This document shows, in pieces, positions 56,999-59,547 of a stretch of DNA of 64,000 bases (position 1 is its first letter; every line of letters begins with the position of its first letter). The DNA lies in sequence record JN849462.1; one strand, written 5' to 3'. Made by a program: the position numbers and the translations under genes. Below the pieces are notes generated by a model. That model was not told the DNA's origin, made no database searches, and was given only the letters and a program-made list of their open reading frames with translations.

Positions 56999-57114
56999 TG
57001 GTAGTCGGGGCTGGATTCGAACCAGCGACCACGTGCTTAACAGGCAATTGAAGGAGTGCTGGAGCGATACTTGTCAGTATCATTCTTCGTGCTCTACCAC
57101 TGAGCTACCCGACT
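56999..57114 (-). ncRNA. tRNA-Asn(GTT)-shaped RNA with a 41-nt insert in the anticodon stem
   Basis: Intact acceptor, D and T arms and CCA; insert between positions 28 and 29 carries a hairpin plus CAGCAC; loop CUGUUAA retained; A73. Confidence 0.75.
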
Positions 57115-57119
57115 ATGAA

Positions 57120-57641
57120 TTATTTAACTTTGAACTTCAAATTACGCCAGTCAAAGTTTCGTTTGTTCTTTGTGCTATAGAACGTGCCCCAATCAATAGC
57201 AATAGGACAGTTCTTACTCCCCACACGAGCGATAAAGACATCGTGAGTCTCGCTGTAACGCTCTCTAAGCTCTTTTACGCGCTTATCGTAGTTAGCGATA
57301 TACTCTGCACAAGCTTTGTTATAATCAGCTTTAGAGAAGCGTTCATTGCTTGCAAAGACACGTCCAAGGTACGGTCGAATAACACGCACTCGCTCTTTAG
57401 ACCAGCCCATACTGAAGCTGTTTTCAATCTCACCGACAATTTTACCAGTCTTCTTACATCTAGCAAGAATAACCCAACAACGCTCACGTCGAAAATCTTT
57501 TCGTACGTACACGTTAACGTGCTTGTCAATGTACTCTTGGTAACGAGCGTTATACTCAGCACGCAGTTTATTGCGTACTTCAGGAGACATTGCAGCGCGT
57601 TCTTCTTTCGAAAACGCTTGTGCGAATTTCAATGGTTTCAT
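57120..57641 (-). CDS. hypothetical basic protein
   Basis: GAGG RBS. Confidence 0.55.
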   Translation of the reverse strand: MKPLKFAQAFSKEERAAMSPEVRNKLRAEYNARYQEYIDKHVNVYVRKDFRRERCWVILARCKKTGKIVGEIENSFSMGWSKERVRVIRPYLGRVFASNERFSKADYNKACAEYIANYDKRVKELRERYSETHDVFIARVGSKNCPIAIDWGTFYSTKNKRNFDWRNLKFKVK

Positions 57642-57654
57642 TATAATTTCCTCT

Positions 57655-57894
57655 TGGCGCCGCTCGTGTGAATCGAACACACGTCAAACACAACACCTCG
57701 TCCACCCGATTAGAGTTTCGAAGTAAGAGCTAATCAGCATTTCGGAGCAGTCGAGCGTTATTTCTACGAGTGAGCTTTCGACAACTCACACGCACTTTCT
57801 ACTCAGTCCCAGTGATTCGGTACCAACACAGGTTGCGAACCTATGTCTGCACTAATGTTGGGAAAACACTGCGTATTGTACACCAGTTAGCGGC
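57655..57894 (-). ncRNA. 240-nt tmRNA-shaped RNA with CCA end
   Basis: GCCGCU/AGCGGC acceptor, no D-stem, 8-bp helix in the anticodon position, GAC-GUGUG-UUCGAUU-CACAC, G73, CCA. Confidence 0.65.
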
Positions 57895-57901
57895 ATTTTA
57901 T

Positions 57902-58132
57902 TTAAAGATAGCTGTCAAAGACATCATCATCAACTTCTTCAATATTGATGTCAGCGTAACATTCATTCGCAATTGCTTGAATTTCATCTATTGAAACTGT
58001 ACCTGAGTACAAAACAACAGCGTCATTCGGAATCACAACATCACACATGTATTTGTTAAACATTGCAGTTCTGAAATCAGAATCAACAGAGTAATCATGC
58101 ATCGAAGTGATAACTAGCAATTTATGTGACAT
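57902..58132 (-). CDS. acidic hypothetical protein
   Basis: GAGG RBS; early promoter upstream. Confidence 0.5.
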   Translation of the reverse strand: MSHKLLVITSMHDYSVDSDFRTAMFNKYMCDVVIPNDAVVLYSGTVSIDEIQAIANECYADINIEEVDDDVFDSYL

Positions 58133-58210
58133 AATGTTTTCCTCGTGTAGTTGATAATGTGTATACTACACGTTGACGAAACGCCTGTCAACAACTTTTT
58201 CAATTTAATT

Positions 58211-58288
58211 TGGTGACCCCAACAGGGCTCGAACCTGTAACCCACCGATTATGAGTCGGTTGCTCTAACCTAGTTGAGCTATAGGGCC
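58211..58288 (-). tRNA. tRNA-Ile2(CAT), lysidine type
   Basis: GGCCCTATAGCTCA...CTCATAA, ileX-like body, CCA. Confidence 0.82.
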
Positions 58289-58289
58289 A

Positions 58290-58658
58290 TCATTTCTCTA
58301 GAAATCTACCAACTTTAGCAGCGAAGATGTTTGCTTCTTCTGCAATCAAAGCAGTCGATTTCATTTGATGAAAAGCGTCTTGTTGATGTAGAACATCTAG
58401 CTTACCCGCGCATTTCATCAGTTCTTTTACTGATTGCATAATCTCAATGTTATCAAGCTGACTAGTATCAGGGTGATGATTTAGATTATCTAAGATAGGG
58501 AGTACTTGTTGATAGCAACCCATACCGATGAAGTTTATCATAAGTCTGTACTGCATTTCAACAGCAAATGTACAATATTTTCGAAGATTGCGTTTTACAA
58601 TCTCACAGCGATGCAAGATACAATCAAGTTCGTCATTTATGTCATCAAACTTATTCAT
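58290..58658 (-). CDS. hypothetical protein
   Basis: GAGG RBS. Confidence 0.5.
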   Translation of the reverse strand: MNKFDDINDELDCILHRCEIVKRNLRKYCTFAVEMQYRLMINFIGMGCYQQVLPILDNLNHHPDTSQLDNIEIMQSVKELMKCAGKLDVLHQQDAFHQMKSTALIAEEANIFAAKVGRFLEK

Positions 58659-58672
58659 AAAACCTCGAAAAT

Positions 58673-58796
58673 TGGTGGAGAGTGATGGATTTGAACCACC
58701 GACCAAAAGATTTACCTAGTTATTAAGGTTTGCAGCATGAATGCTTGTCAGTATTCTTTAACATTCTTTTGCTCTACCAGACTGAGCTAACTCTCC
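58673..58796 (-). ncRNA. tRNA-shaped RNA with motif insert, anticodon undefined
   Basis: GGAGAGU/ACUCUCC-A-CCA; insert hairpin loop UGACAA followed by AUG-CUGCAA. Confidence 0.72.
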
Positions 58797-58805
58797 ATAA
58801 TTTGA

Positions 58806-58920
58806 GGGTGAAGTACAGGACTCGAACCTGCGACCTCCGGCGTGCATGTAAATGCAGAATGAAATCTTATCAGACTTCGTTTTTTGAGCCGGCATTCTAA
58901 CCAACTGAACTAACTTCACC
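58806..58920 (-). ncRNA. tRNA-shaped RNA with motif insert, no CCA
   Basis: CCGGC/GCCGG anticodon stem; GAAGUC-UGAUAA-GAUUUC followed by AUU-CUGCAU. Confidence 0.7.
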
Positions 58921-59037
58921 ATAGTGATCAACAGCCCTCAGAATACCCGCAGTCTACACCCTATAATAAGGGACTATACTGAGTCGTTTAATGAGTCGGA
59001 TAACTCAACTGTTAATCAAATTGTTAAAAACATATAG

Positions 59038-59160
59038 TTGCGGGTGCAGGATTCGAACCTACATCACGATCTTATGAATGATATGCGAAATTGATTGCCG
59101 TACAGATTCTTATCAGAATCAGTTTTGTGCTACGTGTGCTACCACTTACACCAACCCGCA
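59038..59160 (-). ncRNA. tRNA(CAT)-shaped RNA with a 50-nt insert, no CCA
   Basis: Insert after position 28; GAUUC-UGAUAA-GAAUC followed by GUA-CGGCAA; 8-nt loop AUUCAUAA. Confidence 0.7.
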
Positions 59161-59424
59161 ACTATATGCTTTCGGGATGCTTACGCAGGTTCTTCTCTAC
59201 GTAAGCACAGATCCTCAATGTATATTTTGCCTTAGCTAATCACAACACAACCCAATATCGTGCGCTTTAATTACGGGATTGATGACCCGTTCGCATGTGA
59301 TTAGCGTAAAAGTATGATTACGCACCTTTTCTTCTTCAATGTCCAAGGCAAAGAGGACTATGAATACCAGTGCGAGAAGATATACAATCAAATTGCTCAC
59401 CTCGCTTAATAAGTGAGAGTACAT

Positions 59425-59547
59425 TGGTCGAGTGTAACGGAATCGAACCGTTCCCACGATCTCCCTATGATATGCGTAAATTGGTTGCTGAATATAATCA
59501 TGTCTGATTACAGTATGCTACGTGTGCTGCCACTACACCAACACTCG
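59425..59547 (-). ncRNA. tRNA-Pro(AGG)-shaped RNA with a 49-nt insert
   Basis: C1-G72, A73, CCA; loop AUAGGGA; GUAAUC/GAUUAU hairpin followed by AUU-CAGCAA. Confidence 0.72.

What the first reader, a model, noticed from the sequence alone, without database searches (positions are those of the whole stretch)
56999..59547. Five tRNA-shaped RNAs with a 40-50-nt protein-binding module grafted into the anticodon arm
Seen: 56999-57114, 58673-58796, 58806-58920, 59038-59160 and 59425-59547 have normal acceptor, D and T arms. In three of them (Asn-GUU, CAU, Pro-AGG) the insert lies between positions 28 and 29, so the rest of the anticodon stem and loop can still form. Each insert has a hairpin with loop UGA(C/U)AA (AGACAU in one), then 3 nt and C(A/U/G)GCA. 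This is a loop-closed version of the motif that closes the free RNAs. They cluster at the 5' end of the operon. Canonical Asn, Met and Pro tRNAs exist separately, so they are not needed for decoding. Inference: they are stable tRNA-scaffolded ligands of the TROVE-like protein, or decoys for anticodon nucleases.
Basis: partly seen in the sequence, partly recalled or inferred. Interest (0 to 1): 0.9.

Follow-up and report, generated by a model that had tools for sequence, protein, structure and literature searches.

The report
tRNA-framed Y-like RNAs of a phage
Five oversized "tRNA genes" at the head of this Vibrio phage's tRNA operon are not decoders: they are tRNA-shaped versions of a widespread, so far undescribed family of Y-RNA-like small RNAs that sit beside a Ro60-like protein gene in many unrelated phages.

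Summary
The window is Vibrio phage phi-pp2 (KVP40-like). The five elements are real. Each has acceptor, D and T arms that keep pairing through compensatory changes, and each carries a conserved module in the anticodon arm. The module is a 7-bp stem capped by a GNNA tetraloop, then 3 nt, then CNGCA(A).

The same stem-N3-CAGCAA motif, without the tetraloop, closes short RNAs next to homologues of the window's DUF2828 protein in 11 of 12 loci from independent phage lineages. There were 44 hits on the gene strand, 1 on the opposite strand and 1.8 expected by chance. Two metagenomic phages carry, right after that gene, a circular permutation of the window's D/E elements. It has YrlA topology and is 63-64% identical to E once re-permuted.

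The DUF2828 protein is predicted to have the Ro60 fold; its top seven PDB matches are all Ro60.

The "ligand of the TROVE-like protein" reading is well supported by comparative evidence, though binding is untested. The anticodon-nuclease decoy, spliced-tRNA and pseudogene readings are disfavoured.

I rate it a new variant of a known kind (Ro60–Y RNA). The RNA family is absent from Rfam 15 and was only guessed at in two recent papers.

The parts
56999..57114 (-). Element A. tRNA frame (acceptor AGUCGGG/CCCGACU, discriminator A, CCA). A 41-nt insert lies between G28 and a remnant stem-loop UGC-CUGUUAA-GCA.
   Evidence: Rfam tRNA 49.8 bits. ARAGORN -i. Annotated tRNA-Pseudo-3 in KVP40. Orthologues in ValKK3, nt-1, K566, D482 and D479.
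57056..57082 (-). Module of A: UGAUACU-GACA-AGUAUCG, CUC, CAGCAC.
58673..58796 (-). Element B. tRNA frame with a full 5-bp anticodon stem (AAAGA/UCUUU). A 54-nt module replaces the loop. Ends in CCA.
   Evidence: Rfam tRNA 55.5 bits. tRNA-Pseudo-4 in KVP40. Orthologues.
58730..58756 (-). Module of B: GAAUACU-GACA-AGCAUUC, AUG, CUGCAA.
58806..58920 (-). Element C. tRNA frame with a full 5-bp anticodon stem (CCGGC/GCCGG). A 46-nt module replaces the loop. No encoded CCA.
   Evidence: Rfam tRNA 51.9 bits. tRNA-Pseudo-5 in KVP40.
58852..58878 (-). Module of C: GAAGUCU-GAUA-AGAUUUC, AUU, CUGCAU.
59038..59160 (-). Element D. tRNA frame (D arm UUGGUGUAAGUGGUAGCAC). Insert after C27-G28. Remnant hairpin AUC-AUUCAUAA-GAU. 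No encoded CCA.
   Evidence: Not found by Rfam or ARAGORN. Frame supported by covariation. Annotated tRNA-OTHER in phi-pp2.
59095..59121 (-). Module of D: UGAUUCU-GAUA-AGAAUCU, GUA, CGGCAA.
59425..59547 (-). Element E. tRNA frame. Insert after C27-G28. Remnant hairpin AUC-AUAGGGA-GAU. Ends in CCA.
   Evidence: ARAGORN -i. Covariation. 63-64% identical to re-permuted RNAs adjacent to DUF2828 genes in L014 and L019.
59485..59511 (-). Module of E: GUAAUCA-GACA-UGAUUAU, AUU, CAGCAA.
45522..46958 (-). Gene for the DUF2828+DUF7788 protein (478 aa). Predicted Ro60 fold (HEAT-repeat ring plus vWA domain with an invariant D-x-S-x-S). It is the inferred protein partner.
   Evidence: Pfam. phrog_850 'RNA-binding protein'. 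AlphaFold pLDDT 76. Top 7 Foldseek PDB hits are all Ro60, E 2e-7 to 7e-6. Invariant D275/S277/S279.
59829..59948 (-). Two sigma-70-like promoter matches upstream of the first elements (TTGACT-16-TAGAAT and TTGACT-16-TAAGAT).
   Evidence: These are consensus matches only.
59573..59704 (-). Free (open) Y-like RNA just upstream of E. Terminal stem UGUGCGU/GCGCACA, N3 UAG, then CCGAAA here (CCGCAA in ValKK3, nt-1, phi-ST2, VS2 and V05).
53897..53954 (-). Free Y-like RNA, 58 nt: AGCAAUC-UUU-CAGCAA...GAUUGCU.
55042..55128 (-). Free Y-like RNA candidate, 87 nt: AGCUUGC-AUA-CUGCAA...GCAAGCU.
52386..52599 (-). Free Y-like RNA candidate, 214 nt: AGACAAU-AUA-CAGCAA...AUUGUCU.
50111..50357 (-). Free Y-like RNA candidate, 247 nt: AGACAUU-GUA-CAGCAA...AAUGUCU.

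Best explanation
The five genes encode tRNA-framed members of a phage family of Y-RNA-like small RNAs.

The family's signature is a 7-bp stem (5'-A/U-G-N5 paired with N5-C-U/A-3') followed by 3 nt and CNGCA(A).
- In most phages the stem is made by the RNA's own 5' and 3' ends. The longer members then carry a T arm, a loop-closed acceptor stem and a D arm inside, which is the YrlA topology.
- In KVP40-like phages the same RNA is circularly permuted. The acceptor stem is open, so the RNA looks and is processed like a tRNA. The signature stem sits in the anticodon arm, capped by a GNNA tetraloop.

Inferred mechanism:
1. The RNAs are transcribed early from the promoters at the head of the tRNA operon.
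2. They are cut out by the tRNA-processing enzymes (RNase P, 3' trimming, CCA addition).
3. They persist full-length and do not decode.
4. They use the stem-N3-CNGCA module to bind the phage's Ro60-fold DUF2828 protein.
5. By analogy with Ro60-Y RNA particles, the RNA would gate or tether the ring protein to host RNA-handling enzymes for RNA surveillance or counter-defence.

Shown: the structure, its conservation, the homology and permutation, the motif-gene association, and the protein's predicted fold.

Inferred: the processing, the stability, the binding and the biological role.
For: **1. Real, selected structure.**
- Acceptor, D, T and H1 helices are 96-100% paired. 22 of 28 pairs are changed on both sides. 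0 of 500 shuffles reach the observed values.
- Orthologues of A, B, D and E persist down to about 75% identity in Schizotequatrovirus, Mylasvirus and unclassified Vibrio phages.
- A tRNA-framed copy lies 2.6 kb from the DUF2828 gene of Aeromonas phage phiWae14.

**2. Not decoders.**
- The remnant loop changes identity between orthologues that share the same body: E has AUAGGGA against AUUAGGA, and D has 7-8-nt loops of varied sequence.
- Three tRNA programs assign three different anticodons.

**3. The module equals the open motif.** The closed stems end ...C-U[GNNA]A-G..., exactly the 5'-AG.../...CU-3' termini of the open RNAs.

**4. Association with the protein gene.**
- In 12 loci around DUF2828 homologues there are 44 strict motif hits on the gene strand, 1 on the opposite strand and 1.8 in shuffles. 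11 of the 12 loci have at least two hits. The twelfth, Aeromonas phiWae14, has no open hit but carries the tRNA-framed closed copy.
- The lineages include Felixounavirus, mycobacteriophage Faith1, Listeria, Campylobacter, Staphylococcus, Enterococcus, Bacillus, Klebsiella, Ralstonia and two metagenomic contigs.
- The T4 tRNA region has 0 hits.

**5. Permutation.**
- L014 and L019 carry the permuted RNA about 30-170 nt after the stop codon of a 43-45% identical DUF2828 homologue.
- After re-permutation it aligns colinearly with E at 63-64% identity, including the non-tRNA blocks CACACGUAGCA, CAGCAA and GCAUAUC. E against its own paralogue D is 65%.

**6. Protein fold.** Top seven PDB matches are all Ro60, full length, TM 0.50-0.57.

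**7. Literature.**
- A Felixounavirus Ro60-like protein directly upstream of the tRNA genes counters the Ppl defence, and the authors guessed that some 'tRNAs' are Y RNAs (bioRxiv 10.1101/2024.10.10.617714).
- In Listeria phage CKA15 the most abundant phage transcripts come from unannotated regions within 2 kb upstream of the Rsr-like gene (PMC12282133). In the related phages LP-048 and cka16 I find three motif RNAs in that position.
- Vibrio phage records with the RNA number 54 and those with the protein number 56.
Against: - No binding, expression or processing data exist for these five RNAs.
- In this window the protein gene is 10-12.6 kb downstream, not adjacent. The association rests on homologues.
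- Because DUF2828 genes sit in or beside tRNA clusters, the motif RNAs could be tied to the tRNA operon or to another conserved neighbour rather than to this protein.
- The motif (CNGCAA) differs from the Ro60-binding motif of known Y RNAs (GNCGAA / GGUCCGA).
- The protein matches Ro60 only at the fold level: 12-15% identity, no Pfam TROVE hit, model pLDDT 76.
- The H1 covariation set was gathered with a scan that demanded pairing.
Confidence: 0.65

Rival explanations
1. The module binds a partner other than the DUF2828 protein, for example host PNPase or another RNase, a tRNA-modifying or repair enzyme, or another phage protein. On this reading the neighbourhood with DUF2828 only reflects shared residence in tRNA operons.
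For: - DUF2828 genes nearly always lie inside or beside tRNA clusters, so adjacency is confounded with the operon.
- In the window the gene is more than 10 kb away.
- Y RNAs of D. radiodurans and phage phiLo also contact PNPase (PMC4201824, PMC12135203).
Against: - In Faith1, Staphylococcus S-CoN_Ph8 and Campylobacter PC14 the motif RNAs abut the DUF2828 gene, at most about 120 nt away. Faith1 has no tRNA in the 11-kb locus, and S-CoN_Ph8 has only one, about 2 kb away.
- The T4 tRNA cluster, whose 8-kb locus holds no DUF2828 gene, has no motif RNA.
Confidence: 0.15
2. The RNAs are decoys or sponges for host tRNA-targeting defence nucleases (anticodon nucleases such as PrrC, RloC or VapC-like enzymes). 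They would present mimic anticodon loops on a tRNA body.
For: - Intact tRNA elbow and acceptor.
- H2 is a 3-bp stem with a 7-nt loop stacked on C27-G28/C42-G43.
- Phage tRNA clusters are generally linked to defence against tRNA cleavage (PMC7824862).
Against: - H1's loop is a 4-nt GNNA cap, absent from the open homologues.
- H2 loops vary in sequence and length among orthologues. U33 is lost in D479's copy (CCGUUAA).
- The strictly conserved part is N3-CNGCA, which has no counterpart in an anticodon arm.
Confidence: 0.1
3. They are intron-containing tRNA genes. The insert is excised (by an unknown endonuclease, with the phage RNA ligase and the 2H-phosphoesterase gp57B) to give ordinary tRNAs.
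For: - Removing A's insert gives a canonical 5-bp stem and a CUGUUAA loop.
- KVP40-like phages encode RNA ligases. gp57B (60212-60667) matches an 'RNA ligase' PHROG family.
Against: - No contiguous excision gives a canonical anticodon arm in B or C.
- D would have an 8-nt loop.
- E's anticodon differs between orthologues.
- The insert is the most constrained, covarying part and is shared with non-tRNA RNAs.
- There is no group I intron hit in Rfam, and 41-54 nt is far too small for one.
- The permuted homologues cannot be 'spliced' into tRNAs.
Confidence: 0.07
4. They are decaying tRNA pseudogenes, as annotated in KVP40.
For: The KVP40 record labels A, B and C tRNA-Pseudo-3/4/5.
Against: Compensatory changes occur in every helix. 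The elements are retained across genera and in five paralogues.
Confidence: 0.01

Closest known systems
YrlA-type bacterial Y RNAs bound by Ro60/Rsr (Chen et al. 2014, PMC4201824; Rfam RF02553)
   Same: - A small RNA encoded near a Ro60-fold protein gene on the same strand.
- A protein-binding stem with a short conserved single-stranded motif beside it.
- A tRNA-like domain with T arm, acceptor stem and D arm.
- The open homologues (L014, L019, Faith1, VpaE1) have the very same order: terminal stem, T arm, acceptor hairpin, D arm. L014 and L019 also carry ACCA after the acceptor 3' strand, which recalls M. smegmatis YrlA being cut by RNase P and receiving CCA.
   Different: - The Rfam YrlA model does not match any of these RNAs. 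The only hit, 29.8 bits against a gathering score of 69, spans the T arm of B and the D arm of C, the dimeric-tRNA artefact that the authors warn about.
- The motif is CNGCA(A), not GNCGAAN0-1G.
- The protein is DUF2828/DUF7788, not Pfam TROVE.
- The five window RNAs are circularly permuted: open acceptor stem with CCA, and the binding stem loop-closed in the anticodon arm.
Thermus phage phiLo Ro60 with Yrl1/Yrl2 (PMC12135203; PDB 9L5Y)
   Same: A phage-encoded Ro60-fold protein with phage-encoded Y-like RNAs beside its gene. It is the best structural match of the window's protein.
   Different: - The phiLo RNAs were picked by a CGAA motif and are not described as tRNA-framed.
- Sequence identity of the proteins is about 15%.
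Bas63 gp130 (Felixounavirus Ro60-like protein, counter to the Ppl defence; bioRxiv 10.1101/2024.10.10.617714)
   Same: - The gene lies directly upstream of the tRNA array, as does VpaE1_045, a 46% identical homologue of the window's protein.
- The authors speculated that some annotated tRNAs are Y RNAs.
   Different: - No RNA was identified there.
- I did not test that gp130 is the orthologue of VpaE1_045. This rests on both being Felixounavirus (my own knowledge) and on the same gene position.
- In VpaE1 the motif RNAs are open, lie between the tRNAs and are not annotated as tRNAs.
Phage T4 stable RNAs species 1 and 2 (rnaC, rnaD)
   Same: Non-decoding stable RNAs of about 120-140 nt inside the syntenic tRNA cluster (gene order 3, 1, 57A, 57B, then tRNAs), with tRNA-like 3' parts.
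   Different: - No stem-N3-CAGCAA motif in the T4 locus.
- No DUF2828 gene in the T4 locus examined.
- They lie at the distal end of the cluster, not the proximal end.
D. radiodurans Yrn1
   Same: A Y RNA whose tRNA-like part has a different arm order from YrlA, which shows that such permutations occur (PMC4201824).
   Different: In Yrn1 the 5'/3' Ro-binding stem takes the acceptor position. In the window RNAs the acceptor is a true open tRNA acceptor and the binding stem is in the anticodon arm.

Membership tests
tRNA (Rfam RF00005) | Cloverleaf with 7-bp acceptor stem, D arm with GG, and T arm with GTTCRANYC | tested here: met
   A, B and C score 49.8-55.5 bits against a gathering score of 29. 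D and E are not hit by Rfam, but their acceptor, D and T helices are 97-100% paired with compensatory changes.
tRNA (Rfam RF00005) | Contiguous 5-bp anticodon stem with a 7-nt loop | tested here: not met
   41-54 nt are inserted in the stem (A, D, E) or in place of the loop (B, C). D's remnant loop is 8 nt.
tRNA (Rfam RF00005) | Anticodon conserved among orthologues (decoding identity) | tested here: not met
   E has AGG against UAG. D has CAU, UCC/UUC, UCU and other variants. Only A keeps GUU, and D479's copy has C33.
tRNA (Rfam RF00005) | Aminoacylation and use on the ribosome | not testable with these tools
   Needs acid gels or tRNA-seq.
YrlA / Y RNA (Rfam RF02553) | Match to the family covariance model | tested here: not met
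   The only hit is 29.8 bits against a gathering score of 69, spanning the B/C junction. There are no hits on the open homologues.
YrlA / Y RNA (Rfam RF02553) | GNCGAAN0-1G motif near the 5' end | tested here: not met
   The conserved motif is CNGCA(A).
YrlA / Y RNA (Rfam RF02553) | tRNA-like domain (T arm, acceptor stem, D arm) | tested here: met
YrlA / Y RNA (Rfam RF02553) | Protein-binding stem formed by the RNA's 5' and 3' ends | tested here: not met
   In the five window RNAs the stem is capped by a tetraloop. The feature is met in homologues L014, L019, L022 and L023.
YrlA / Y RNA (Rfam RF02553) | Encoded within about 4 kb of the Ro60 orthologue, on the same strand | tested here: inconclusive
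   Same strand, but 10-12.6 kb away in the window. Within 0.03-2.6 kb in 12 other lineages.
YrlA / Y RNA (Rfam RF02553) | Bound by the Ro60-type protein | not testable with these tools
   Needs RIP or EMSA.
Ro60 / TROVE protein (window 45522-46958) | Pfam TROVE domain match | tested here: not met
   Only DUF2828 and DUF7788 match at E<=0.01. phmmer against PDB finds no Ro60.
Ro60 / TROVE protein (window 45522-46958) | HEAT-repeat ring plus C-terminal vWA domain with a MIDAS D-x-S-x-S motif | tested here: met
   The top 7 Foldseek hits are Ro60, full length, probability 1.00, TM 0.50-0.57. The model has pLDDT 76. D275, S277 and S279 are invariant in 30 homologues.
Intron-containing tRNA | Group I intron core | tested here: not met
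   No intron family at E<=1 in Rfam. The insert is 41-54 nt.
Intron-containing tRNA | Bulge-helix-bulge splice motif | not tested
   No bulge-helix-bulge motif was seen by eye at the junctions. No formal scan was run.
T4 species 1/2 stable RNAs | Sequence or motif similarity to rnaC/rnaD | tested here: not met
   No BLAST hit of the five elements in L010. There are 0 motif hits.

The most novel reading that the evidence does not exclude
The KVP40-type RNAs are a functional hybrid rather than just a permuted Y RNA. With a genuine open acceptor stem and encoded CCA, they would be handled as tRNAs by RNase P, the CCA-adding enzyme, and possibly a synthetase, EF-Tu or tRNA-targeting defence enzymes, while carrying a Ro60-like ring on the anticodon arm. 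The phage would thereby deliver its Ro-like protein to whichever tRNA-binding machine each of the five different tRNA bodies is recognised by. The pair of topologies would also be direct evidence for how Y RNAs arise from tRNAs by circular permutation.
Probability: 0.2. Interest if true: 0.85.

Novelty: new variant of a known kind. Interest (0 to 1): 0.72.

Why it matters
- **Annotation.** It turns genes labelled 'pseudo-tRNA' or 'tRNA-OTHER' for twenty years into a defined RNA class.
- **RNA partners for a very common protein.** The DUF2828 'RNA-binding protein' occurs in 711 phage genome records and has more than 7,700 homologues in metagenome data. This work links it to concrete RNA partners with a simple, searchable signature.
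- **A testable system.** One such protein is already known to defeat a bacterial defence (Ppl), and related RNAs may be the most abundant phage transcripts in Listeria phage infection. The RNA family therefore gives a way to test how phage Ro60-like particles work.
- **Evolution of Y RNAs.** The tRNA-topology and Y-RNA-topology pair is a natural experiment in RNA circular permutation. It bears on the long-standing idea that Y RNAs derive from tRNAs.

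Tried and rejected
- **Rfam 15** on the window and nine loci. It gave only tRNA hits plus sub-threshold noise: YrlA at a tRNA-tRNA junction, Dicty_Class_I_RNA at 53896-53953, and plastid UTR models on tRNA antisense strands.
- **Literature on DUF2828.** Only incidental plant and tardigrade mentions.
- **The KVP40 genome paper** is not held in the library.
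- **The search for related loci with the neighbouring 186-aa ORF** returned only three loci. A DNA pattern on the D/E arm was what found the decisive metagenomic relatives.
- **H1 loop as an anticodon mimic** (UGNNAA as U33-G34-N-N-A37-A38, a TGT or colicin E5 target). Rejected once the loop proved to be a U-A pair plus a GNNA cap that is absent in open homologues.
- **K-turn** (a 3-nt bulge, but no tandem G-A) and **hammerhead** (CUGAUGA-like loop). Rejected by inspection.
- **Pairing of CAGCAACCAA with the UUGGU of the D arm.** Not general: it is absent from types A, B and C.
- **A recent graft of the module into the phage's own tRNA genes.** Rejected. The bodies are only 63-77% identical to any canonical tRNA of the cluster, and A is not closest to tRNA-Asn.
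- **AcrIIIA1 protein-RNA anti-CRISPR**. Unrelated.
- **Mapping the CKA15 'highly transcribed region 26,236-26,727' onto the motif RNAs.** This could not be done exactly because the CKA15 sequence was not in hand. In cka16 the motif RNAs lie at 25290-25552.
- **The loose motif scan** (G-U allowed, any CNGCA) is noisy, with about 18-43 chance hits per window. Only the strict form was used for statistics.

Full report
**Identity of the window.** Bases 56500-60000 are 100% identical to Vibrio phage phi-pp2 and 96.8% identical to KVP40, a T4-like Schizotequatrovirus. The minus strand carries a tRNA operon from about 59950 down to 50369, with 28 canonical tRNAs. GenBank annotators had noticed the five long elements. 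KVP40 labels three of them tRNA-Pseudo-3/4/5. phi-pp2 labels them tRNA-Val, Asn, Phe, OTHER and OTHER. The phi-pp2 genome paper does not discuss the five long elements; it mentions only three low-scoring pseudo-forms.

**The observation.** On the minus strand all five elements have a 7-bp acceptor stem, a D arm with GG and a T arm with GGTTCRAWTCC. Three end in an encoded CCA.
- Rfam's tRNA model matches A, B and C end to end at 50-55 bits, each with one long insertion.
- ARAGORN with introns allowed finds A, B, C and E but gives arbitrary anticodons.
- In A, D and E the insert follows C27-G28 and precedes a 3-bp hairpin that stacks back on C42-G43.
- In B and C a complete 5-bp anticodon stem carries the insert in place of the loop.

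**Conservation.** Homologues occur in 61 phage records, 54 of them Vibrio phages, down to about 72-77% identity. I fetched 11 such loci and aligned the orthologues.
- In a 19-sequence alignment of types A, D and E the acceptor, D, T and H1 helices are 96-100% paired.
- 22 of 28 pairs are changed on both sides.
- No shuffle out of 500 reaches the observed scores, and sliding the partner drops pairing to 32-44%.
- For the module hairpin alone (28 distinct sequences) all seven pairs covary.

These are selected structures, not decaying pseudogenes. By contrast the remnant 'anticodon' loop is not conserved. E has AUAGGGA in one clade and AUUAGGA in another on the same body. D has 7-8-nt loops of varied sequence. 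That argues against decoding.

**What the module is.** The six-base 'loop' UGNNAA is a U-A pair plus a GNNA tetraloop (GACA, GAUA, GUCA, GUUA, GUAA, GAAA, GGAA). The hairpin is therefore a 7-bp stem whose 5' strand ends C-U and whose 3' strand begins A-G, followed by N3 and CNGCA(A).

A degenerate pattern from the D/E arm found more distant relatives in IMG/VR. In two of them (L014, L019) an ORF 43-45% identical to the window's DUF2828 protein is followed, about 30-170 nt after its stop codon, by an RNA with the same blocks in permuted order:
1. 5' stem strand (AGGUUCG or UGGAUCA)
2. N3, then CAGCAA
3. GCAU
4. a 3-bp hairpin, then CG
5. T arm
6. acceptor 3' strand, then ACCA
7. a short loop
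8. acceptor 5' strand
9. D arm (UUGGUGUAAYAG..GCAC), then ACGUAGCA
10. 3' stem strand

This is the arm order of bacterial YrlA Y RNAs (PMC4201824). I cut these RNAs in the acceptor loop and joined the ends with GACA. They then align colinearly with window element E at 63-64% identity. E is 65% identical to its own paralogue D. The window RNAs are therefore circular permutations of an RNA that sits next to the DUF2828 gene.

**A wider RNA family.** The open form (7-bp terminal stem, N3, CAGCAA) recurs next to DUF2828 homologues, on the gene's strand, in these lineages:

| Lineage (locus) | Open motif RNAs found |
|---|---|
| Felixounavirus VpaE1 (L023) | 4, one with a tRNA-like core |
| Mycobacteriophage Faith1 (L022) | 3, one tRNA-like, directly after the 'Ro-like RNA binding protein' gene |
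| Listeria LP-048 (L028) and cka16 (L036) | 3 each |
| Campylobacter PC14 (L029) | 2 |
| Staphylococcus S-CoN_Ph8 (L030) | 3 |
| Enterococcus EfV12-phi1 (L031) | 3 |
| Bacillus Tsamsa (L032) | 3 |
| Klebsiella KP2025 (L034) | at least 3 |
| Ralstonia RSP15 (L035) | 2 |

- A strict scan of the 12 loci (98.5 kb) gave 44 hits on the gene strand, 1 on the other strand and 1.8 in shuffles. The T4 tRNA region had none.
- Aeromonas phage phiWae14 has no open hit. It has a tRNA-framed closed copy 2.6 kb from its DUF2828 gene.
- The window itself holds open copies between its tRNAs: 53897-53954, 55042-55128, 52386-52599, 50111-50357 and 59573-59704.
- Rfam 15 matches none of these RNAs.

**The protein.**
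- Window 45522-46958 (minus strand) matches Pfam DUF2828 and DUF7788, not TROVE.
- It has homologues in 711 phage records and more than 7,700 proteins in the large database.
- An AlphaFold model from 30 homologues (pLDDT 76, pTM 0.74) has Ro60 structures as its seven best PDB matches: phage phiLo, Xenopus and human. These cover the full length at probability 1.00 and TM 0.50-0.57. Isolated vWA domains follow.
- The MIDAS-type D-x-S-x-S motif is invariant.

'TROVE-like' is therefore right at the level of fold.

**Literature.**
- Ro60 with a tRNA-like Y RNA is an established particle (PMC4201824). A phage example has been solved (PMC12135203).
- Iyer et al. noted ROT/TROVE proteins with a tRNA-like partner in some jumbo phages (PMC7824862).
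- The PhageMaP preprint found that Bas63 gp130 is Ro60-like, lies directly upstream of the tRNA genes and counters Ppl. Its authors guessed that some tRNA genes might be Y RNAs.
- A Listeria phage study found its most abundant transcripts within 2 kb upstream of the Rsr-like gene and raised the same guess.
- None of these defines the RNAs, the CNGCAA signature or the tRNA-topology permutation.

**Mechanism.**
- Shown: the structure, its selection, the homology and permutation, the motif-gene linkage and the protein's predicted fold.
- Inferred: the five RNAs are cut from the operon transcript by tRNA-processing enzymes, stay full-length and bind the Ro60-like protein through the stem-N3-CNGCA module. 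The particle would then act on RNA metabolism or defence, as other Ro60-Y RNA particles do.
- Five divergent tRNA bodies kept as separate orthologues suggest that each body matters, perhaps for distinct tRNA-binding partners. That is speculation.

**Rivals.**
- *Splicing* is unlikely. No excision gives a canonical arm in B, C or D. The insert is the most constrained part. It is shared with RNAs that are not tRNA-shaped.
- *Decoy for anticodon nucleases* is unlikely. The only anticodon-like loop is variable and the conserved part is not anticodon-like.
- *A different binding partner* remains possible because DUF2828 genes live in tRNA clusters. However, the motif RNAs abut the gene in Faith1, whose 11-kb locus has no annotated tRNA, and in a Staphylococcus phage with only one tRNA about 2 kb away.

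**Verdict.** The main interpretation is supported by comparative evidence but not by biochemistry. I rate the finding a new variant of the Ro60-Y RNA kind, belonging to a large undescribed phage RNA family.

Noticed in passing
window 46976-47041 (-), just upstream of the DUF2828 start codon at 46958: A 7-bp stem encloses a T-arm-like hairpin (ACAGGUUCAAAUCCGUGU). It is followed by CAGCAA and then the Shine-Dalgarno sequence GAGGAA. This could be a leader Y-like RNA or an autoregulatory binding site for the Ro60-like protein.
   Followed up: partly
window 53897-53954, 55042-55128, 52386-52599, 50111-50357, 59573-59704 (all -): Free 'open' RNAs between the tRNAs, closed by the AG-N5 / N3 / C(A/U)GCAA terminal-stem motif. 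The copy at 59573-59704 has CCGAAA here but CCGCAA in ValKK3, nt-1, phi-ST2, VS2 and V05. Only strict-pattern evidence was gathered; no covariation was done.
   Followed up: partly
L023 7755-8531; L022 6472-6728; L028 2663-2926; L029 2825-2973; L030 4532-4739; L031 2245-2830; L032 1212-2881; L034 4634-5099; L035 5251-5441: Two to four motif RNAs lie next to the DUF2828 gene in each of nine unrelated phage lineages. They are unannotated, or overlapped by small 'hypothetical protein' CDS calls that are probably spurious.
   Followed up: partly
window 60212-60667 (-): The gp57B homologue directly upstream of the operon matches the PHROG family 'RNA ligase'. Relatives annotate it as RNA ligase / cyclic nucleotide phosphodiesterase (2H family), a possible RNA-repair link to the tRNA / Y-like RNA operon.
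   Followed up: no
window 57681-57901 (-) and 59161-59424 (-): Long non-coding gaps with strongly predicted structure (-64 and -75 kcal/mol) between the elements. The 73-aa ORF 59236-59457 annotated in KVP40 overlaps element E and may not be a gene.
   Followed up: no
L028 5852-7063 (Listeria phage LP-048): An RtcB-like RNA ligase gene lies 1.3 kb downstream of the DUF2828 gene on the same strand, echoing the bacterial rsr-yrlA-rtcB operon.
   Followed up: no
Literature: PMC12282133: The DUF2828-type protein of Listeria phage CKA15 (CKA15_055) was detected in purified virions with 57% sequence coverage. The Ro60-like protein may therefore be packaged and injected.
   Followed up: no
L005 3142-3260 and 3505-3626 (Vibrio phage F86): The inserts of paralogues D and E are nearly identical within F86 but differ in the window. 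This suggests gene conversion between the paralogous modules.
   Followed up: no
L021 5144-5448: A permuted tmRNA (Rfam RF04321, 63 bits) lies in the same tRNA / Y-like RNA cluster of a 208-kb metagenomic phage contig.
   Followed up: no
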